A stretch of 64,000 bases of DNA from Klebsormidium nitens (lineage: Eukaryota; Plantae; Klebsormidiophyceae). Position 1 is the stretch's first letter. Each line of letters opens with the position of its first letter. The DNA is taken from the NCBI GenBank assembly GCA_000708835.1, contig DF237375.1:1-64000 (forward strand), in the 5' to 3' direction. The position numbers and the translations under genes are program-made. The notes under the pieces are model-generated. The model did not search any database, was not told the DNA's origin, and saw only the letters and a program-made list of their open reading frames with translations. Shown here piece after piece: positions 48,883 to 60,800 of the stretch.

Positions 48883-50634
48883 GGCTGCAGCAACGGGCAG
48901 CTGGGCGAGAGAGGAGAATGGGGAGCAAAGTGACTTTGGAGATGTGGCGAGTTTTGTGCGATCACCAGTGCTTTTGAGGGTGCACGAGACTGCAGAGCAT
49001 ACCGACAGTGTCCAAAAGCGGAGCTTTCGCTTTGGGCAGATCTCGAGTCAGCGGTAGGTACTACCTAGTACCACCTACCTGGATAGACTAGGTATAGTCG
49101 TGCTAGCTACTGTAGAGCTATTAGGTAACCCGTTACCCTTACTTTTCAAAAGGGCCCGGTGATGGTTAGGGTTAAATTGGTTATGACTTCTGATGTTACG
49201 GTAGGTGACTTTGCCAGCGAGGAGCCTGATGGGGTGCCTTCGAGACGAGACGTGGTCATGCAAGATACCCGGGCCCGGCCCCGGGGCGTCCATTTAACAC
49301 CGGCCGGAATCTCAGTGCTCTGTATAGACTGCAGTGTGCTGGCGGTGAGTCGCTCTGCACATGACAGCTAGCGGCCTCCACCAATTATTGCAGCAGTTAC
49401 GACAGATTCCCTGCTCGCGCACCTCATAAATGTATGTACGTGTCGATCAGGCATGAATAAAGACAAACCCAAAGAATCGAAGATCCATCCACAAACGACA
49501 AAAGTTGTTGCACATGGGCGCCGTTCATCTAAGCACAACAAGATCGATCCACGGCTCAGGAATCTCGTGCCTTGAGGCTTTCAGCATGTGTACATTGCTG
49601 ATTGGTCACGCGTGTTGACCATCAATGTTTTTCGGGACCAATGGGATTGTGCCGTACCGGAAAGCTGCAATCTGAGTCCGTAGATGCAGCATACTCTAGT
49701 CTCTCAGAGTGTTGCCGCGATGAAAGAAAACTGTCGACGACGGTACAGGCTCGGAGGGCCGCGCCCGAAAGCGCGAAGTGAGCAGCATAACTAGGTAGGT
49801 AGGTGAGTGCAACGTGAGGGCATGTGATTGTATGGCTTCAGAAAATCAGGTTCTCAAGATGCATACCATACAGCTGTCACTCTGGCAACTCTCGTGTGAC
49901 TTTATCGAGGCGTGTGACTTAAGATAGGCGCCCGGAGGACGGGCGGGGTAGGCCTAAGGTGGTTAGGGTGGCTTGGAGTGCGGAGCGCATGCATGATTGT
50001 CTCGGTTAGGATTTTTAGTTTGTGTACCCGGTAGCTCGAATCAAACGCCCGTTAGGTCGCACTGGCAAGCGTTGCCCGTATATAGCTATCGTGGTCGCCC
50101 TGCATCTCCGAAATGCTGGAGTGGGATTGGTATGTTAAGTACACCAAAGTACGCCGCTCTTGCTATAGCCATTTGCATATCCTAAGGGTCTGGCAAGCTG
50201 ATTAATAATCCCGCGCGGCACTAGTAAGCATCTCATTGATTTCTCGTTGAGTGTCATGCCCTGAAAATGGTGCATCCAAACGATTCTTTGTTACCAACTA
50301 CCAAGAACATTTTCGGGAGACATGCCAGGCGCCAGCACACTCGCACCAACTCAGATCTCGCAATGCAACCTTGTGCCAAACGTGGTTTCATTGAGCAATG
50401 ACAACCGGCATTCACCTCGCTGATGAGTCTTGTGGGTACAGGTGTCTGCGTATCAAGATGAATCATTCAGGGCAGTGCAAGCCCACACTTTTTCTTGCAA
50501 GGGCGGTAGCTTCTCATCCCGTCCCAGTATAGACTAGACCAACCAAACGGGGCCTTCGGCCAGCATGTCGCTGCGATCTCGGATTCGGAACGTCCTGTAT
50601 GAGGACCTTGCTACTTCAACACGGTGGACAAGAT

Positions 50635-53600
50635 TCATGTCTCCATCTCATCCTTGGACCAAGTGCCTTCGCCGTCGCCCCGAATGTGCACAACTTGCGA
50701 GTGCCATCTCTTGAGCGTGTGCCGGTGTGAGATGGTCAGAAGGCTGGTGTCAAGAGCAGCGAACTGGGCGTAGATACGCGCCTGCAAGCAGAAACTCGAG
50801 GCCTGAGCTTTGCGATTTCCAGGAATTGCCACATGATACAATGGGATAATTGGGACCTTTCGACTTACATGCAGTCAGATCTCACCACTCCTTGATGTCA
50901 CTCAGATCCTGCAATGGGGCTGAGAACTTCTCGAAGAAACTCTGAAAGGGATGCGCAATTATTTTTGACACGCGGCACACGCCGCGATATCCGAATGCAC
51001 AACCTTGGGTAAAAGCTTTCGTAAATGGCATCTCCCTTGGCCCGCACCTTCTTTGTGTATGACAATTCATGATACTGGTAGCCGTTTTCTGGCCCCCGGC
51101 TCGCATCTACACCCAAGCAAACCAGATGAATGCTGGCCTTTCCTTTGCGATACACCACAAGTGCGTTTCCGCTCGCTGAACACGTAACACAAGAAGAACG
51201 CGACATATGCGCCACTCCACGCTACAACCCACCCTCGCCAAGACGTGGGTCATGAGCGACGTCACATCAACTAGGATGGTCGCTCGCAGTCAAAGTACTA
51301 ATTTTGACATCAGAAAGAGAAAAGCCAATTGCCCTTGCCGCACGGCTCGTGAGATTTCGAAGAAAGTGCCAACCCAGAATTTGTGGATTAGTCAAGTGGG
51401 CGTAGGCATCGTACTGACGGCATCGACGGAATGTGACGGCAACCTCACCATCCCATAAATCCACTCGGTGTTTGTTGCCGTCCAATCGGACATTGAATTT
51501 CGAACCCTACGCCCACTTTGGAAAAGTGCGTACCTCCAGAGCTTCGCCGATTGCACTGGTGGCTTCGTCCAGGATCGCCAGCCGGGGTCGGTGGAAGAGC
51601 ACCCGGGCGAGGGACAGCCGCTGCTGCTCGCCCGGGGAAAGAATCGCCGGCCAGTCCTCGTCGCGCTGTAAAAAGAAAAAGATGACCTATTGAACCACTC
51701 TGGACCGGAATCCTGATTAATACCGGGCAGCTGAGAAGGTTGCTCCTTGCGGCTATCCTTCGTCTAGGGAAAGAATCGCCGGCCAGTCCTTATCGCGCTG
51801 CGGTAAAAATGATAGACCGATTTGAGAAAATGATAGACCGATTTGAGAGAAAGATAGGCCGTGTGAAGAAGAAGAGACCGTTTGAAGCACTCGGGAGGAT
51901 CTAGGGCCAAACTCTGTTTGCTAATGGGCAGCTGAGAAGGTTACTCCTTGCGGTTGTCTTTCGTTCGCGGAAGGGATTGCCGGCCAGTCCTCATCGCGCT
52001 TTGTAAAAGGAGGATAGACCTTTCGATGCATCTTGCAAAGTTTAGGACAGAACTTAAGTGATAACGGGCAGCTGAGAAGGTTGCTGAAACTTTAGATTTG
52101 CGGCTGTCCTGCATCGCTGAAAAACTGCGTCATAACGTGGTGATCGCACACACTGCCTCGCCTCGATACGATCAAGTCCGGCTGGCCTTTGCACTATTGC
52201 AAGATCTGAGAGACTGATGCGCTCGAAGCATGCAAGTTCTATTGGCGGGCGTCAAGAGTGTCAATTCTTATTTGACTTTTCGTTTTAACGGCTCTCGACG
52301 TGGACGACCGAGCCCACTGGTTTCTGTCGGGCAGCTTTGAGACCCGGCTTCTCAGTATCCACCGGAGGCCCTCGCCACTTAGGCAGAGGAAGAAAGACAA
52401 CGCAGCAAAGGAAACATATCTGACACTCAATGCAAAGCATTACAGTGGTCGATTACATATCTCCTCCTCCTCTTCCCAATAATAAAGACTGTCCTTATCC
52501 ACGGAGTTCAACTGAACCCCAGGAAGATAATCGTAGAAGAAGAGCGTACAGAGAAGACCTTATGAAGCCGAACGACATTAGGTAAAGAAAACTACGGAGT
52601 CCGACTTACCGTCCAGTTGCCGTCCACTCGATGCAAAAGGCTGTCCAGTTCCACGATCGTCAGAGCCTCCCGCATCCTGCTCTCGACGTCCTCCGTGAAG
52701 GAAGGCACTTCCCGGGGGTACGAAAGCTGGGCCGCGAGACCCCCCCGGGCCAGGAGCGGCGTTTGGGGGAGGAACAGGGTGCCACTTCCACCGGAAGGAA
52801 GACCTGTCCGTATCAAACCTGCGAAGGGACCAGGATGCACTCCTCAGAAACAGACGTCGTTCGTGATAGACGGTATGGAAGGCGGCAGCCGATGCCCACT
52901 CAAAAGAACAGACTGGCGGGGGGCTCGATCAGGTTTTCGATCCGGAGCCTCGAAAGGACTTGCAAAAAGCCGTCGAGAAACGGACTGGGCGACTTCAACC
53001 CACTTCTGCAAAGGCCATCTGCTTAGGCTGTCACGATAAGCACAAACTGCAGCTTATTCTCGCAGGGAAAGGGATCCACTAAGATAAGTGAGTCCGAACC
53101 TTTGATACATAAAACATCACAAGATTTACACTAGGTTTGATGTCCAGACCCAGTAAGATTCGGAAGCAACGCTATCCAGGGACTGCAAGAGATTTTGGCC
53201 AATGCTCAGCACGCTTGATGTGATAACTGCGATGGAGAATTTGAAATGATAGACCGAATGCCCACACCTTGAAAGACGCAAACTCCAAAACCTTAAGAAG
53301 TGGTGTGTACACATGCGGACACCCACCTTCGACCTGCGGCCACAGCCCGGCAATGGCCCGTACAAGTGTCGTCTTTCCGCAGCCGCTCGGGCCCATCAGC
53401 ATAACCCGCTCCCTAACCCCAATCCTTAGGTCGAATGCTCGCACCACCAAAACGCCCCCGGGGGTCTGCACCGTCAGGTTGCTAACCTCCAAAACAGGAG
53501 CACTAATGGCGTCGCTAACCCCATCTGCAAGCTCGGCACTTATTCCGTGAGTTGATCTGGGCGAATCGAAAGGCGGGCTCCGATCGGAAACAGATATCCT

Positions 53601-56600
53601 GGCCTTCTCGATCGCTTTGCTGAGCACGTCCAGTGGGGCGTTGGTGAAAAGCGAGGCGGGATACGTTCTCGACCCAAACCGGGGGTGGAACACGACAGGA
53701 CACGTGCCTGAGGTGCCGGTCTCGTAACCCAACAAAACTTCAGCCCCATGGACTTCGCTGTACGCTGCTGTTAGCTGATCAGAGGACTCTAACCCTAAAA
53801 CTAAACCTGCTTCTGACCCTTGTGCATCTTCGACAGTGACTATTTCGCCGTTGCTAGAGTGCGGACTGAGGTCGGCTGAGCGCAAGAGACTGCTTTGCAA
53901 CCTGGCGCTGTTGGAGGGGTGATTTGAGGCAGCGCTCGTTTCAACCAACGCTGGGTTAGAGGACAAACCAATGCCTAAACTACTGCTGAGGCTGCCGAAC
54001 GAGCTCTCATCCCCTAGCGAATCGGCCTCCTGAAACTTCCCAGCGCCTCGCCCATCCCGGCCGTTACTGCGACGGTTCCCCAAATTGACGCCAAGACTAT
54101 CTCCCAGATCCACAAGAGCCTCAGGCTTCACTCCACATCTCAACGGCTCCGCCTCCGCAAACCTTGAAGAGACCGCTAATCCGGTTCTTGGATCGACCGC
54201 TGCCGCCCAAAACCCTCCCTCGCGGAGCGCCCCGCAAACCGCGCCCTGCCAACTCAGGAACACGTCGCCTAACCGTGCCATCTCTTGAGACACGCTCAAC
54301 TCATCCCCTGCCCCTTCCAAAACGTCCGAAGACGGCCCTGAAGCTCCCGTTCCGTTTCGATCCACACTCTTGCCGCCGCCGCTAATTCTCCCCTCCCAAA
54401 GATCGACTTTTGCGCCCTGAAACGTGGGAACCACTAAAAGGGGCTGCGTCCACAGGCCCGGCGCCCCCTGCTCCAAGAAAACCTCTTGGAGGATCCCCCG
54501 CAGCTCGGGCGGCACCGTGTGAACGCTGAACTCGAGGGATCCCCCTCCGAGAGATTGCGTTAGCGGCCCTAGCAGAAGCCCGTTAGGGAATCCCTCTTGG
54601 ACGGGCGCGAAGGGGTTAGGGAGGGTTTGCGTCCAGGGGAACGGGTTTGAGAACTGGGCTAGGGGGCCTTGGTCTTTCAACCCCGGGAGGGAGGGCGTTA
54701 GGGCTACAGACTGCGCAAGGAAGTGCGCAAGCGAGTCTCTTTCTTGCGGGCCCTGTTTTTGAGAGCGGCACTTCTCATCAGGTTGGACTTTTGCTTCGGT
54801 CGCCGTGCCCCCCATCCTTTCCAGGGCCTCAAACAACCCCGCAACACGGCCGGTCACCCCCGCCACGTCAGACAGCACTTTCGCTGCATCAATCAGCTGG
54901 GTGAAGCTGTAAATCAGGGTCAGAATCGCAAACGACGCATTGCTAACCAGCTGTGCTATCGCGCCCTTGTCGACTTCTGCCCCTTTCCCGTAGATCCCGA
55001 CGAAAATAGGGAGTGCGAGGATGGCGTAGTTGAGAATTGAGCCACTGTAGTCATAGGCCTTGCTGCCTAGCTCAAGGATTGTGTGGCGGATGACGAGCGA
55101 GCGCTGGTTGGTTAGGACGTGGTTAAGGTCCAGGTTAAGGGCGGTCCGCTCGACGGGGCTGGAGGCGTACAGAGCCACTTGCTCGGCGTTGTTGCGCAAC
55201 CTGGGGCACAAAGGGGCGGGAACGGCGTCAGAATCGATAACATAAAGCACTTTGCAAAGTCAGAAACTGCATCTGATTGCACTTGTGTTGCTCAACATCA
55301 AGTTCCATTGATGACGTTGCTGAACACAGTGCTTCTGAACGCGTGCCTGGACGGCTTCTTGGCACGTTGGAACAACGTGAGACCAGGGACCGGTGCTTTG
55401 ACTGGACGGACGACGAGCTTGCTATCCATTATAGCCAGCAACATGAGAAGTGCCTCGCTTTTCTTACTGAGTTGCGGCCCTTCATCTCTTTCTGTCAGCC
55501 AGAAGGTCATCCACGCTGCTCACCTGACGTGTGCAACTCGGAAGTCCCCTTCCAGCTTCTCTTGCTTTGCCACAAGGGCCGCGATTGGGGAGATCAGGCA
55601 GCGCGCCCCCAGAGTACCGACAGAAAAGAACAGGTACACAGCGAGAGGCCCTGTCCAGCCGACGTACGACCAGACAAGCACCGTGTAGTATGCAATCATG
55701 AGCGGAGCAACAACGGTCTTGTGGAGGAGTTGAGCGAGGCCTGTTGAGAAGAGCTGGATCTCCTGCAGCAGAGAAGAGCGCAGGGTGGTGTCAGGAAAAG
55801 AAAGGGTTGTCATGAGGGTAAGACGACGATTGCCAAGAACAGGATGACCTCCTGAGACATCTTTTTGCGTACAGTGTTGTGAAGAAACAAATAGTTTGGT
55901 GTGGCCTTTGCGAAGCTCTTCGTAGGATTGAAACCTGGTCTCAAAGTGCGGTTTACAGATTGCCAGAGCGCAATGACAAATTTTGCGATTTTGATTCGTC
56001 TCACGGCCAGTTTAAGATAGTTACGAGGGCGGCCAACTGAAACCAGTTACAGTTTTTGGGACCGCCAATACTCTGCCAGATGCGACCGCCAATACTACGT
56101 ATGATTCACAAATAGGGTCCCAAATGCAAGCACTAGTGGCCTTAAAAGATTCCATCTGGGAGCCCCCTTCTTCCATCAGATAACCACCAAAATGCTCAAA
56201 CGTCAGACCCTACCTGAGCCACACGCTGATCCGGGTTATCCACCGCTCCCTCTTTCATGAGGTGAAACACGTTCGAGTCACGGCAGTATCGGCTGTGAGC
56301 GGCCAGTGTCAACCGCTTCCGCCACTGCAGCGCTAGCATCTCCGAGACTCCGAGCTTGACACCAGCGCACAGCGCGGCAGAGCTATACCAGAGCAGGGAG
56401 CGCCACATGGCGGAAGCAAAGAGCTACAAGAGGGGCAACCAATGGGGCACAGATCAGTGAGTGTTCACGTGGTGGTACTGAAGCGAGCAAGGAAGAATGC
56501 TCAGGCAAGCTCATCCAAATAGAGGAACGCTCTTGAAAGCTGTGTGGTGCTCTGATGTCTTCTCCCACTTCCAAGTTCGTCAGCTGTCCTAGGGCTGGGG

Positions 56601-57146
56601 GGGGAGCTTAGGTCATGCTGTAAGCCATTCGCTTATGAGTTAGACGATACATGCCTCGAGGGCTCTTCAATTGGCTGATCAAGAACGGAACCTTAAACTG
56701 ACTTGAATGCCAAGTCCTCTGAAACACCCATCCTCTTGAACCCTCTTGAGGTCCAAATGACACCCTCTGAACCCTAACCCTAAAATCTTGCAATCACAAA
56801 CAATGTGAGCCTCCGCAGCGCTCACCTTCACGTCATTATCCAACAAGGCCTTGTAGAACAGCCCGGGAAGCACGCCGACCTGCGCAATCACGAGCACCTC
56901 CAGGACTGAGAGGGCCGCTAAGAGCAGTGCACCCTGAGCTCCGGCAAGCACCATGAGTCGCCCCAGTCGCTGCACAAAGCGCAAGTCAACGCCGTTGTCT
57001 TGCCTAGGAGTGGCATTATCTGGAGCTCGCGCATCCTTGCTATCTTCGGAGGGCTTGGAACCAGCCAAGATCTGGTCAATGGAGATGCATTGCTCTTTGG
57101 CCCCATTCTGCAGGTGCGTGTACCCATGAAGCAAAGGTGTCTCCAT
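50635..57146 (-). CDS. ABCD4: ABCD4 (CblJ)-type half ABC transporter with an in-frame inserted MMADHC/CblD domain, ~1043 aa
   Basis: Exons 57146-56826, 56423-56214, 55762-55524, 55200-53327, 52818-52610, 51665-51534, 50781-50635, phases all compatible. ABCD4 hallmarks [54 protein letters not shown]; Walker A GPSGCGKT; Q-loop FLPQTP; signature LSPGEQQR (LSPGE as in human ABCD4); Walker B ILDEATSA; H-loop ISHR. Confidence 0.93.
51640..52125 (-). repeat. Three degenerate intronic copies of the acceptor and start of ABCD4 exon 51665
   Basis: gaatcgccggccagtcct..tcgcgctg recurs at ~51640 (true), ~51770 and ~51970, and more decayed at ~52100. Shared spacer gggcagctgagaaggtt at ~51725, ~51927, ~52066. 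Confidence 0.82.
53607..54539 (-). other. MMADHC: MMADHC/CblD (cobalamin-trafficking, nitroreductase-like fold) domain inside the ABCD4 reading frame
   Basis: Blocks [102 protein letters not shown] match, in order, human MMADHC as recalled ([20 protein letters not shown]...LRAEGYWADFIDPSSGLA...[25 protein letters not shown]). Confidence 0.85.
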
Positions 57147-57837
57147 CTTACCAGCCCCGACTACAAAGAAGAAAGGGTGGCCTTTCCTGCCAGCATTTCC
57201 AGACCATTGGCAGCTGGATCTGCAGCTTTAAAAAACTGGCCTACTTCAGGTAACGAACACCGCTTGCAGTATGAAGAGTTGGTGAATCGCTGTCATTTGG
57301 AGCTAGGTATTTAGGTACCTCCTATGCATTTGTGAGGACCTCAGCTTCAGAATGGTTTGTGCTCATACTTTGAACAGTCTTCAGCGTTCAGGCCCAGGGC
57401 GGCTTTAGGCATTAGTCCTAATGGCCTGCCATGAGGGCCTGGACCTGGGTTTAGGGTCAAGGTTGGGTGCTTGGTCAAGCATCATGCTATTATGTAAATA
57501 GCATGGTTAAAGAAGCTGCCATGCATGGCTTGAGGGCTGAACCGTTTAACCGTAAAGGGTTAACGCAAACGGAGGTTTAGAAGTAAACTAGCAGAACTTG
57601 AACTTGAAGCGAGCGCGGTCAGAAGCGAGCGCGATTCTAAAGCTCATAGCTAGTAGGGGCAAGGTGCTCAACAAAGCATTGCAACAGGCAAAAGGACAAT
57701 CACAAAGCTGTGCCAGCAGCAAGAAAGGGCGGCCGCTGCGCTGTTCACCCTTTCGCTGAGCCAAGCATCAGCCCACTGGCGATTTGATATGCCGCTGCCT
57801 TAAGTTAACAGCCGCAGCATTGTTCTGATATAGATCG
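57147..57837. promoter_or_regulatory. Probable bidirectional promoter region between ABCD4-MMADHC and MTase-RFK
   Basis: Only ~690 bp separate the divergent ATGs at 57146 (-) and 57838 (+). No specific motif identified. Confidence 0.45.
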
Positions 57838-60800
57838 ATGGCGGTGCGAGCGGCCCAGCGAGTGGGCGCCAGCAACACTGCCAAGTGGTTTGCCGACCGC
57901 ACACGAATCGCAGCCTCGCCAGTCAAAGCAGGGAATTGCTTGGTTACTGCTCTAGCTGTTGAAACAGATTGCTCAAGGGGGGTCAGTCTGTTCATCTCAG
58001 CACTTAGCAGGAAAACCACTGTCTCCAACTTGAAACAGTGTGCTTCAGTCGCCGGATTCCCAATCGTCAACCTAAGTCCACCACTCAGGGGCGTCCGCAA
58101 TAAAAGAAGGAGCTCCGCCATCCCACGAGCTTCGGCCACCGCTCTCACATCATCGAATGATGAAGCAACTCACAACAACTTACAGCAGGAGCACTACGAC
58201 AGAGACTATGCAGCCTACATCCAGGAGGTTCCACCTAAAGTCACGGAGTCCTTGGAAAAGATTGTAAATGCCGCCAGTTTGAAACCGTCTCACAAGGTGT
58301 TAGACTGCGGCTGTGGACCGGGCCGCTTGATCCCCCATATACTGGCGGCTGGAGTGGAAGATGTAGTAGCGGTTGACCTGTCTATCATGATGATTGCCCT
58401 GGTGAAAGAGCAGTTTGACAATGTGCGCTGCTGGCAAGGGGATATAGTGAATCTGCCTCCAGCGTTCGGGCCTTTTGATGCAATCTTTGTGAACGAAGTC
58501 CTGGAGAGTGTGCATTCGCAGGAGGCGGTGCTGAAAGCAGTGGCCGGATTGCTCCAACCAGGTATGATATCTACTGTTTTTGGCTTTCCTTGCTCTGCTT
58601 ACTAGACTGAGAAACCCATGGGGGGTTGGTGCAGTGGTGATGGCAAAGTGCTTGTGCGGTGCAGGTAGACAATGATAAGTACACCACCTCCTTATCGTGC
58701 TTCTATTTCAAGGGAAAGTTTATCTCTTGGACTTAAAGGAATCATCCCCTAAAACGACGTATGGTCGGACATTCAAACTTCAGACCTTCCTGTCACTGTA
58801 CCAAGGAGAAGCACCCCATCAGATGACGTCTGGTCGTACATATTGAACTCACAGACTATCCTGTCAGTCAAAACATCACGCAACAGAAGACCTGTCTGCC
58901 TGCAATGAAAGGAGAGTCGTGCCAGGGGCAGTTGCTGAGGAGCTTGTGGTGACCTCGTCATCGCCATCTCACATGCAGGGGGAGCAATCATCATCAGTCA
59001 CTCGCAAGGGCGGCGAGTATCTGAGTTCTACAAGAAAAAGAGTCCTGAGCTCCACCCCCATAGTCTGCCAGATACAGAGGAGCTGAAGAAGCTGGCGGAA
59101 GGCGCCAGTTTAGATGTAGAGGCGTTCACAGATGCTGAGGACTTCTACCTGGCTGTCCTGAGGGTGAGTATGCGCACAGGCGTCACTGTTGATTTTGCAG
59201 GAGCATGTAGCAGTTACTGAATATAATGGGGCAGTGCAGATAGAGACGATGAGCGTCTTTTGTTTGCCTGGGCTCAATCTCCCTTGACGCCCTGCTTGAG
59301 GGTTGTGAAAAGGTCGGGTGCAGGGTGCTCATAGACCCGATTTCCTTCAGGCAAAGACGGCGTTTGTGCCTCCCTAGTTTCGAACAAGGACCGGAGAGTC
59401 AAAAAGGACAAAAGCTCGTGATTGCTGCAAGCTGGATAGCACATGGCCCTTGGGCCGACTGTCATTGTCAAACTCCAGTGTCAATCTGGTGTGGATGCTT
59501 TGTCCCACCAACTCTTTACTCGCCCTGGCCATCTTGAAAACAGAACATCTTCTTTGCCCATGTGCCAAGCACGTGCCACTGCACTGGATCAAAGTGCATA
59601 CCATCTTTTAGAACACCTTGCAGGACTCTCGAGCATCAAGCGAAACGCCTAGGCGAAGGGAAGAGGCGGCAACGTCTGATTGGGAAGATGGTAAGCACCG
59701 AATAGCCTTCGTTTGGAGACACCTATTGGGGAACCGCTCTAGTTCTCGTGGTCAGGGGGGTTCGGAGAATCAAGACTAACTGTACGTTTGAACCAGATTT
59801 TTGAAAGGCCCGAGCAAAGAAGGCGTCGGCAAAAAGAGTATGTCGCATCTGCAAAGCGAGAACACCATCCTGAGGTGTAATCACGTACTTCTTGGTACGA
59901 AGCGGGTGATAGACTGGCATCGAAACAGCAGCAGAGGACCAACTCTCAACGCCACTTTGTCGTTGTTTTCAATAAACAACTACCACGTTCTTCGTCCTCC
60001 AACGCTGACACGGCTTTCACATGTGCAGATTCTTCTGCTGATGTCGGCTTGACACGACCGATTTCGATACGTTTGCATCCTTGGTGCGCGGCAGTGTTAT
60101 GCTTCCCCAAAACCTGACGTTCCTGCGTGTACAGATCCATACTACTTCGCAAAAGCGCCCCTCTACATGAAGACGCCCGTCGTGTCTGGATTCGGCCGGG
60201 GGAGCCGACAGCTTGGATTCCCAACTGGTGAGCTAATGACTCCATTCAAAGCTCCCGAAGAAACTGTAGAAGCGTTCTTACGACACATGTAGTCGAAGTT
60301 CTGGAGTCTTGCGTCTTGATTTTGCAGTTTACAGCGTTGACCAATTGCCCGTACCTAGCCTACTGAAAGCAGCAAAGTCGGTATACAATTTTTCCTTCCA
60401 CGCGAATGCACCTCTGGTTCTTTCGTACCTACAAGTAGTGTCGACAAATCAGTTCGAATTGCGGCTGACGCTTTCAGAAGGAGCCTCGACTCGAAGATTG
60501 AGTAGATTCGAAGGGCACGATTGTGTGCGGAACAGGGCCGATTGTCAGTTCCACAACCTCCTCCCTCGTCCCGATCGAATCATTGTTCCATACCCTTTAG
60601 AGCATTAGGTACAGTGTGTTCAGAACACTCTCTCGACTTTTGATAAGTCCCGTTTGATCAGTGATATCCCTCAGCAAGGTCGTGTGATGCAATCACGTCC
60701 ATCATATTCCGCTGTCCGTTTTCCTTCCGCCAGCAAACCTGGCGCCGGAGCTGCTGGTCAAGGAATTAGACGGGCTGATGAACGGGGTCTACTTCGGCTG

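What the first reader, a model, noticed from the sequence alone, without database searches (positions are those of the whole stretch)
50635..57146. ABCD4 (CblJ) B12 exporter fused with a CblD/MMADHC B12 chaperone domain in one polypeptide
Seen: a complete ABCD4-type half transporter has an ~310-aa segment (53607-54539) between its last TM helix and Walker A that carries the CblD motif blocks in order. TMD end, CblD segment and NBD start are all in one 1874-bp exon (55200-53327) with no stop, so this is not a gene-merging artefact. Established: in animals ABCD4 (with LMBRD1) exports cobalamin from lysosomes, and separate cytosolic CblC/MMACHC and CblD/MMADHC proteins pass it to methionine synthase and methylmalonyl-CoA mutase; human CblD Cys261 (in GCC) is a reported cobalt ligand. 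Here the matching site reads GTC (Cys at 53700-53702), so one Cys is kept. Inference: a Rosetta-stone fusion placing CblD on the cytosolic face where B12 exits, i.e. a channelled B12 export and hand-off module in a green alga. It would support direct ABCD4-CblD coupling. I am not aware of a description of this fusion.
Basis: partly seen in the sequence, partly recalled or inferred. Interest (0 to 1): 0.93.

Follow-up and report, generated by a model that had tools for sequence, protein, structure and literature searches.

The report
ABCD4 transporter with embedded CblD domain
This green alga's version of the vitamin B12 exporter ABCD4 carries a copy of the B12 chaperone fold CblD between its membrane part and its ATPase, an arrangement shared across green algae and apparently undescribed, which makes the unsolved B12 hand-off from transporter to chaperones testable.

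Summary
The window is Klebsormidium nitens. The minus-strand gene 50635-57146 has 7 exons and encodes 1043 aa. It is an ABCD4-type half transporter with a ~430-aa insert between TM6 and the NBD. TMD end, insert and Walker A share one 1874-bp exon. Spliced RNA contigs from four studies keep the insert and reproduce the annotated protein exactly. The insert core matches Pfam MMADHC only at the cut-off (25.5-27.9 bits against 27). However, it keeps the family's conserved residues, and its AlphaFold model matches only human or mouse CblD structures.

- **Not unique.** At least 25 cluster representatives from streptophyte and chlorophyte algae share the architecture, and their CblD domains form one clade.
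- **A paralogue.** K. nitens also encodes a canonical stand-alone CblD (181 aa, with the Cys-Cys pair).
- **Which Cys is kept.** The retained Cys aligns with human Cys-262, the position conserved family-wide. The Cys-261 ligand position is Thr.

Most likely the domain is a tethered B12 acceptor or docking module at the cytosolic exit of the transporter. This is inferred, not shown.

Nine literature searches found no description, and a published survey scored CblD and CblJ as separate proteins. No earlier scan note covers this fusion.

The parts
50635..57146 (-). Coding region of the gene (7 exons, 1043 aa plus stop). Exons: 56826-57146, 56213-56423, 55522-55761, 53325-55198, 52610-52816, 51533-51665, 50635-50780. 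Some splice cuts are ambiguous by 1-2 nt without changing the mRNA.
   Evidence: RNA contig joints, the last junction, and an exact translation match to P0001.
54804..56927 (-). Transmembrane domain, aa 74-389 (spans introns). ABC_membrane_2, six long helices.
   Evidence: PF06472 at 4.5e-51. Human ABCD4 is the best PDB sequence match. AF2 helices have pLDDT about 85-92.
53325..55198 (-). The single 1874-bp exon that holds the TMD end, the whole insert and Walker A.
   Evidence: Contiguous in spliced contigs from 4 RNA runs, with no internal joint.
53493..54785 (-). Whole insert between TM6 and the NBD, aa 396-826. It replaces the roughly 30-40-aa linker of human ABCD4.
   Evidence: Alignment to human ABCD4 stops near residue 362 and resumes near residue 402. 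blastp of fused homologues against ABCD4 shows the same gap.
54561..54734 (-). Linker block aa 413-470, conserved among Klebsormidium-type homologues (67% invariant) but modelled as disordered. Function unknown.
53586..54578 (-). CblD/MMADHC-like fold, aa 465-795. Three well-modelled blocks are interrupted by two disordered loops.
   Evidence: AF2 gives 134 residues with pLDDT >= 90. The top 8 Foldseek PDB hits are all CblD, with TM by target 0.69-0.78, and the next hit has E > 1. PF10229 match. Atlas feature search returns MMADHC clusters.
54312..54389 (-). Disordered variable loop 1, aa 528-553. By my alignment to a human MMADHC sequence recalled from memory, it sits where human CblD has loop 186-197, which contacts CblC.
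   Evidence: pLDDT < 50. Only 4% of columns are invariant among 4 close homologues. The human interface is described in PMC12501144.
53772..54164 (-). Disordered low-complexity loop 2, aa 603-733.
   Evidence: pLDDT about 25. 15% of columns are invariant.
53700..53705 (-). Thr756-Cys757 in the beta-hairpin motif G-T-C. Thr aligns with human Cys-261 (the Co ligand) and Cys with human Cys-262.
   Evidence: Ungapped HMMER alignment to 5cuz chain positions 157-158, which are residues 261-262. Cys is kept in 89 of 93 family members, and the preceding position is Cys in only 35 of 93 and in none of the 18 fused forms.
50647..53492 (-). Nucleotide-binding domain, aa 827-1040 (spans introns). Walker A 53370-53393, Q-loop 52757-52771, signature LSPGEQQRL 51615-51641, Walker B plus catalytic Glu 51558-51581, H-loop 50719-50733.
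   Evidence: PF00005 at 2.6e-17. Motif coordinates. pLDDT about 90.

Best explanation
Shown: the gene encodes an expressed ABCD4-orthologous ABC half transporter with intact ATPase motifs. The TM6-NBD linker has been replaced by a folded CblD/MMADHC-paralogue domain carrying two long disordered loops. The architecture arose once and is kept across chlorophyte and streptophyte algae, alongside a separate canonical soluble CblD. Inferred: the transporter dimer moves cobalamin from an endolysosomal or vacuolar lumen to the cytosol, as human ABCD4 does. The two tethered CblD-like domains would sit beside the cytosolic opening. There they would either capture the emerging cobalamin directly through the conserved hairpin Cys757 thiolate (a Co-S bond, as in human CblD), or dock the soluble CblD. 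The embedded domain lacks the vicinal second Cys that human CblD uses to release the cofactor. Release would therefore need an incoming thiol, most plausibly the Cys-Cys hairpin of the soluble CblD, which would then load methionine synthase (METH). The outcome would be a channelled hand-off that avoids free cytosolic B12.
For: Transcript and gene structure. ABCD4 orthology: PDB phmmer gives 321 bits for human ABCD4 against 170-180 bits for the half transporters ABCD1 and ABCD3; the best non-fused database hits are all vertebrate ABCD4, at E-94 to E-66; the top Foldseek hit is 6JBJ. Motifs are intact. CblD fold. The domain keeps the residue at 15 of the 16 positions conserved family-wide (only Gly568 departs from the family's Leu), including Cys757 and His762. 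Purifying selection: core blocks are 57-77% invariant and loops 4-15% among 4 Klebsormidium-type homologues. Breadth and single origin: (SH-aLRT 99). Stand-alone CblD in the same genomes. Human CblD binds B12 through a Cys thiolate, either vicinal Cys can coordinate in vitro, and CblD can load methionine synthase: PMC12501144 and bioRxiv 10.1101/2023.07.25.550549. K. nitens is scored as having METH in Dataset S1 of bioRxiv 10.1101/2023.06.07.544158.
Against: There are no functional data of any kind: no B12 binding, no transport, no localisation. The Cys aligning with the human ligand Cys-261 is absent. Two of 18 fused domains lack the conserved Cys (Chloropicon has His, P0082 has Ala). Human CblD alone binds aquocobalamin only weakly, about 1 uM. 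By my alignment to a human sequence recalled from memory, the loop matching the human CblC-contact loop is a variable disordered insertion here. AF2 gave no confident placement of the domain relative to TMD and NBD (pTM 0.52). The Pfam score in this protein is at the threshold.
Confidence: 0.55

Rival explanations
1. The domain is a docking or scaffold module that binds no B12. Like CblD, which reuses a nitroreductase fold for protein-protein contacts, it would recruit soluble CblD, CblC where present, or METH to the transporter. It could also dimerise under the TMDs to couple the two halves.
For: Human CblD is described as a fold repurposed for protein interaction (PMC11311337). The ligand-position Cys is missing, and the conserved Cys is absent in 2 of 18 fused forms. 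A soluble CblD coexists in the same genomes.
Against: The hairpin Cys and the flanking His-Pro are as conserved in the fused clade as in free CblD (16 of 18 and 18 of 18), which suggests the hairpin chemistry is kept.
Confidence: 0.3
2. The domain is a regulatory sensor or plug. It would gate ATPase activity or the cytosolic exit according to B12 or redox state, rather than passing the cofactor on.
For: Its position between TM6 and the NBD is where TMD-NBD coupling is transmitted. Long disordered loops are typical of regulated linkers.
Against: No regulatory motif was tested. Conservation follows the CblD chaperone residues rather than new ones.
Confidence: 0.1
3. The fusion is an annotation or assembly artefact, or a decaying relic insertion with no function.
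For: The Pfam score is borderline in K. nitens, and more than half of the insert is low-complexity.
Against: Spliced RNA contigs from 4 studies keep it. It lies within one exon with an open frame. The same architecture is present in at least 25 diverged clusters from two algal phyla. Core residues are conserved.
Confidence: 0.02

Closest known systems
Human ABCD4 (CblJ), lysosomal cobalamin transporter (PDB 6JBJ)
   Same: Half-transporter layout, PF06472 TMD plus PF00005 NBD, about 33-36% identity over TMD and NBD. It is the best sequence and fold match. All ATPase motifs are present.
   Different: The human TM6-NBD linker is about 30-40 aa, whereas here it is about 430 aa and holds a folded CblD-like domain. 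The human protein depends on the escort LMBD1, whose presence here was not tested and which a published survey scores as nearly absent from green algae.
Human MMADHC / CblD (PDB 5CV0, 6X8Z, 9MRS)
   Same: Same fold (TM by target 0.69-0.78). Same conserved core residues and the same Cys-bearing beta-hairpin followed by His-Pro.
   Different: It is embedded in a membrane transporter rather than soluble. It has no N-terminal mitochondrial extension. It has one Cys (the Cys-262 position) instead of the vicinal pair. It has two long disordered insertions, one of them at the CblC-contact loop by my alignment to a human sequence recalled from memory. It belongs to a separate paralogue clade.
K. nitens stand-alone MMADHC (KFL_004540080, P0267, 181 aa) and its green-algal orthologues
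   Same: Same family (PF10229 at 119 bits). It is 29-47% identical to the embedded domain over the conserved blocks.
   Different: It is soluble, compact and carries the canonical G-C-C-K hairpin. It groups with the stand-alone CblD of Chara, Volvox and Trebouxia rather than with the fused clade.
Mycobacterial Rv1819c / BacA-type ABC transporters (PDB 6TQE)
   Same: Same PF06472 TMD family, and linked to B12 uptake. It matches P0001 at 142 bits.
   Different: It is bacterial, has no chaperone domain, and is much more distant than ABCD4.
IcmF (MeaB G-protein chaperone fused to isobutyryl-CoA mutase). This comparison rests on my own knowledge and was not tested here.
   Same: A natural fusion of a B12 chaperone with its client machinery, which was used to infer the partnership of the separate proteins.
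   Different: It is a bacterial enzyme-chaperone fusion, not a transporter-chaperone fusion, and the families are unrelated.

Membership tests
ABCD4 (ABC subfamily D, cobalamin transporter) | Half transporter with ABC_membrane_2 (PF06472) TMD followed by an ABC_tran (PF00005) NBD | tested here: met
   PF06472 at 4.5e-51 and PF00005 at 2.6e-17
ABCD4 (ABC subfamily D, cobalamin transporter) | Closer to ABCD4 than to the peroxisomal ABCD1-3 | tested here: met
   PDB phmmer gives 321 bits for ABCD4 against 170-180 bits for the half transporters ABCD1 and ABCD3. The best non-fused hits are all vertebrate ABCD4. The top Foldseek hit is 6JBJ. No formal tree with ABCD1-3 outgroups was made.
ABCD4 (ABC subfamily D, cobalamin transporter) | Intact Walker A, Q-loop, signature, Walker B with catalytic Glu, and H-loop | tested here: met
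   All motifs were located in the spliced CDS
ABCD4 (ABC subfamily D, cobalamin transporter) | ATP-driven cobalamin transport and lysosomal or vacuolar location | not testable with these tools
   Needs reconstitution and tagging
MMADHC / CblD (PF10229) | Profile match at or above the Pfam gathering score | tested here: inconclusive
   25.5-27.9 bits against a cut-off of 27 in K. nitens. Orthologues score 31.7 (P0003), 36.6 (P0087) and 52 (Chlorokybus) bits, and Chloropicon falls below the threshold.
MMADHC / CblD (PF10229) | CblD-type nitroreductase-like fold | tested here: met
   AF2 core has pLDDT > 90. The top 8 PDB hits are all CblD at probability 1.00, and the next hit has E > 1.
MMADHC / CblD (PF10229) | Residues conserved family-wide (Q, E, F, W, D-P, G, E, Y, C, H-P, Y-P, A-P) | tested here: met
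   Kept in this protein and in 16-18 of 18 fused forms, except that Gly568 replaces the family's Leu
MMADHC / CblD (PF10229) | Vicinal Cys-261/Cys-262 pair used for the Co-S bond and disulfide release (human mechanism) | tested here: not met
   The motif is G-T-C. Thr is at the 261 position and Cys at the 262 position. No fused form has the first Cys.
MMADHC / CblD (PF10229) | Orthology to the canonical soluble CblD | tested here: not met
   The fused domains form their own clade (SH-aLRT 99). K. nitens has a separate canonical CblD, P0267.
MMADHC / CblD (PF10229) | Binds cobalamin or CblC and delivers cofactor to methionine synthase | not testable with these tools
   Biochemical assay needed

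The most novel reading that the evidence does not exclude
Green algae are scored in a published survey as mostly lacking CblC and LMBD1. In them, the transporter-embedded CblD-like domain may take the place of CblC as the first cytosolic acceptor of B12. With the soluble Cys-Cys CblD it would form a tethered CblC-CblD-like heterodimer. B12 would then pass lumen -> ABCD4 -> embedded Cys -> soluble CblD -> METH by successive thiolate exchange without ever being free. That would be a minimal, physically channelled eukaryotic B12 trafficking pathway, distinct from the animal one.
Probability: 0.25. Interest if true: 0.88.

Novelty: new variant of a known kind. Interest (0 to 1): 0.72.

Why it matters
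How cobalamin leaves ABCD4 and reaches the cytosolic chaperones without being released free is an open step in eukaryotic B12 trafficking. In humans, contact between ABCD4/LMBD1 and CblC is only predicted or shown in vitro.

A natural, ancient and conserved polypeptide ties a CblD-fold domain to the cytosolic face of ABCD4. It gives a defined construct for structural and spectroscopic tests of transporter-to-chaperone hand-off.

It also names a strong candidate gene for intracellular B12 handling in green algae, many of which depend on B12.

Finally, it corrects gene surveys. A survey of 1,663 genomes and transcriptomes scored CblD as common but CblJ as almost absent in green algae, and scored neither for K. 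nitens. This is what one would expect if the fused gene is counted once or missed.

Tried and rejected
- **Gene-merging or read-through artefact:** rejected by spliced RNA contigs and exact reconstruction of the protein.
- **Isoform that splices out the insert:** no joint lies inside exon 4 in 4 runs. Logan contigs can hide rare isoforms, so this is not excluded.
- **Peroxisomal or plastid ABCD identity:** rejected by score comparison, though no outgroup tree was made.
- **Fusion unique to Klebsormidium:** rejected.
- **The fused domain is the only CblD of the organism:** rejected.
- **Rfam scan of 50000-58500 for a riboswitch or other RNA:** nothing found.
- **Bacterial promoter/terminator scan:** irrelevant for a eukaryotic gene.
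- **Atlas search with a whole fused protein:** returned only generic ABCD clusters and no large cluster with the triple architecture.
- **Literature:** nine full-text searches found no description of the fusion. That library lacks most subscription journals, and the architecture is visible in automatic Pfam annotations of database entries.
- **Could not test:** whether K. nitens has MMACHC or LMBRD1, whether hornwort and liverwort 'CblJ' are fused, and whether Chlamydomonas has the fused form.
Full report
**Identity and gene structure.**
The window comes from Klebsormidium nitens. The long ORF in the finding is 100% identical to the annotated 1043-aa protein 'ABC transporter D family member 4' (P0001).

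ORF 53172-55250 on the minus strand runs without a stop from the last TMD helices, through about 430 extra residues, into Walker A. tblastn of P0001 on the window gave seven coding pieces.

I laid Logan contigs of four RNA runs from four different studies on 51400-57200. Each run held one contig of 3.1-3.6 kb covering all exons. Five introns were removed, with CT..AC ends on the plus strand, which is GT..AG on the gene strand. Exon 53325-55198 was unbroken, and intron depth was 0-8 against 23-103 on exons. The last junction was placed by the loose end at 50751-50780.

Joining 56826-57146, 56213-56423, 55522-55761, 53325-55198, 52610-52816, 51533-51665 and 50635-50780 translates exactly to P0001.

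**The transporter part.**
Pfam finds ABC_membrane_2 at 4.5e-51 (aa 74-323) and ABC_tran at 2.6e-17.

Several results point to ABCD4 rather than ABCD1-3:
- Against PDB sequences, human ABCD4 scores 321 bits. The half transporters ABCD1 and ABCD3 score 170-180 bits. The 326 bits of Arabidopsis ABCD1 come from four stretches of a full-size, two-half protein.
- In the 5.8-billion-protein search, every non-fused hit down to E-66 is a vertebrate ABCD4.
- The full-length AlphaFold model has human ABCD4 (6JBJ) as its top Foldseek hit.

Walker A, Q-loop, signature, Walker B with the catalytic Glu and the H-loop are all present. I did not build a tree with ABCD1-3 outgroups.

**The insert.**
PF10229 (MMADHC) is hit at 25.5-27.9 bits against a gathering score of 27, so Pfam alone is borderline for this protein. 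Orthologous inserts score higher: 31.7 bits for a Klebsormidium relative, 36.6 for P0087 and 52 for Chlorokybus.

A profile of four Klebsormidium-type inserts found 530 proteins at E <= 1e-3 among 1.84 billion representatives, mostly 170-300-aa MMADHC proteins. An Atlas feature search of aa 470-800 returned MMADHC clusters as the top 24 hits, the best scoring 0.91.

AlphaFold with a 93-sequence alignment gave 134 residues at pLDDT >= 90 and two disordered loops. Foldseek against the PDB returned only human or mouse CblD structures as significant hits: 5CV0, 6X8Z, 9MRS, 5CUZ and 5A4R, with TM by target 0.69-0.78. The next hit had E > 1.

The domain keeps the residue at 15 of the 16 positions that are at least 90% conserved in the family; only Gly568 replaces the family's Leu. 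Among four Klebsormidium-type homologues the core blocks are 57-77% invariant and the loops 4-15%. That is the pattern expected of a folded, selected domain with free loops.

**The cysteine.**
HMMER aligns the K. nitens hairpin without gaps to chain positions 148-182 of 5CUZ. Chain position plus 104 gives the residue number, checked against the full-length numbering of 9MRS. Thr756 falls on human Cys-261 and Cys757 on Cys-262.

Published work identifies Cys-261 as the axial Co ligand and Cys-262 as the vicinal thiol that displaces it during release. It also notes that B12 can coordinate to either Cys in vitro (PMC12501144; bioRxiv 10.1101/2023.07.25.550549).

In my 93-sequence alignment the second position is Cys in 89 sequences, while the first is Cys in only 35. 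None of the 18 fused forms has the first Cys. Sixteen of them keep the second, Chloropicon has His there, and the metagenomic P0082 has Ala.

**Distribution.**
Among the best 150 representatives, about 25 long proteins show an ABCD4 TMD ending near human residue 351. An insert of 180-600 aa with the MMADHC match follows, and the ABCD4 NBD resumes near residue 390-400.

The named ones are:
- Streptophytes: Chara braunii, Spirogloea muscicola, Mesotaenium endlicherianum, Closterium and Chlorokybus atmophyticus.
- Chlorophytes: Micractinium conductrix, Chlorella sp. A99, [Myrmecia] bisecta, a pedinophyte, Chloropicon primus and Tetraselmis (a fragment).

Three single-ORF calls from Klebsormidium relatives (P0002-P0004) cover the same stretch from TMD end to Walker A, so the one-exon layout is also kept there.

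In a maximum-likelihood tree of the CblD domain, the 18 fused domains plus one 218-aa fragment form one group with SH-aLRT 99. All other stand-alone proteins lie on the other side. The stand-alone CblD of Chara, Volvox and Trebouxia cluster together there.

**A second, canonical CblD.**
A profile of stand-alone green-algal CblD found KFL_004540080 of K. nitens (P0267, 181 aa; PF10229 at 119 bits) with the canonical G-C-C-K hairpin. It also found stand-alone CblD in Chlorokybus, Spirogloea, Closterium, Chara, [Myrmecia] bisecta, Micractinium, Chlorella and Ostreococcus. P0267 is 29-47% identical to the embedded domain over the conserved blocks.

The embedded domain is therefore an old paralogue. 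Because both clades contain streptophytes and chlorophytes, the duplication and fusion most likely predate their split.

**Mechanism (inferred).**
By ABCD4 topology the TM6-NBD linker is cytosolic and lies at the side of the cavity that opens to the cytosol. A homodimer would carry two such domains.

The conserved hairpin Cys, the intact ATPase and the coexisting soluble CblD and METH fit a tethered acceptor that takes B12 as it emerges and passes it on. Lacking the vicinal Cys, the embedded domain could not release the cofactor by the human disulfide route, so it would need an external thiol, most plausibly the Cys-Cys hairpin of the soluble CblD.

A pure docking role and a regulatory role remain open. 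The weak points are these:
- There is no functional evidence.
- The Cys-261 position is lost.
- Two fused forms have no Cys.
- The loop I align with the human CblC-contact loop (186-197) is a variable disordered insertion here. That alignment uses a human sequence recalled from memory.
- AlphaFold did not give a confident domain arrangement (pTM 0.52).

**Literature.**
Nine full-text searches found no description of this architecture. Reviews say only that CblC is predicted to meet ABCD4/LMBD1.

[quoted passage not shown] Its Dataset S1 gives the following:
- CblD is scored as common in green algae.
- CblJ and CblC are scored as nearly absent from green algae.
- K. nitens is scored with MetH and MetE but with neither CblD nor CblJ.

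Both CblD and a CblJ homologue exist in K. nitens, so those zeros are false negatives. The reported absence of CblC should be treated with the same caution.

The architecture is implicit in automatic Pfam annotation of public entries, so it is undescribed rather than unseen.

**Verdict.**
This is a real, ancient, lineage-wide variant of ABCD4 with an embedded CblD paralogue, and a good experimental handle on the transporter-to-chaperone step.

Noticed in passing
window 57838-58605 (+): The divergently oriented neighbour ORF (255 aa) carries a class I SAM-dependent methyltransferase domain (Methyltransf_25 at 1.1e-15). It starts about 700 bp upstream of the ABCD4-CblD start codon. No link to B12 was tested.
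   Followed up: partly
P0089 (822 aa): Another MMADHC fusion: a CblD domain followed by MmgE/PrpD N- and C-terminal domains (2-methylcitrate dehydratase family). This links a B12 chaperone fold to the B12-independent propionate pathway. The organism is unknown.
   Followed up: partly
P0124 (490 aa): A GDSL lipase/acylhydrolase domain fused upstream of a full MMADHC domain. It is unexplained and may be a gene-model merge.
   Followed up: no
P0062 (Chara braunii, 1924 aa): A second Chara copy of the fused gene has a reverse transcriptase plus RNase H block between the NBD pieces. It is probably a retroelement-disrupted copy or a merged gene model.
   Followed up: partly
P0005 (Spirogloea muscicola, 1280 aa), residues 1-440: The N-terminal 440 aa precede the ABCD4 TMD and have no Pfam match. 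They are likely a merged upstream gene model, not part of the transporter.
   Followed up: partly
window 54561-54734 (-), aa 413-470: A linker block just after TM6 is 67% invariant among Klebsormidium-type homologues yet predicted disordered. It could be a short linear binding motif.
   Followed up: no
bioRxiv 10.1101/2023.06.07.544158, Dataset S1: The published survey scores K. nitens as lacking CblD and CblJ, and green algae as almost lacking CblJ. This is contradicted here by P0001 and P0267. The fused gene probably escapes reciprocal-best-hit assignment.
   Followed up: partly
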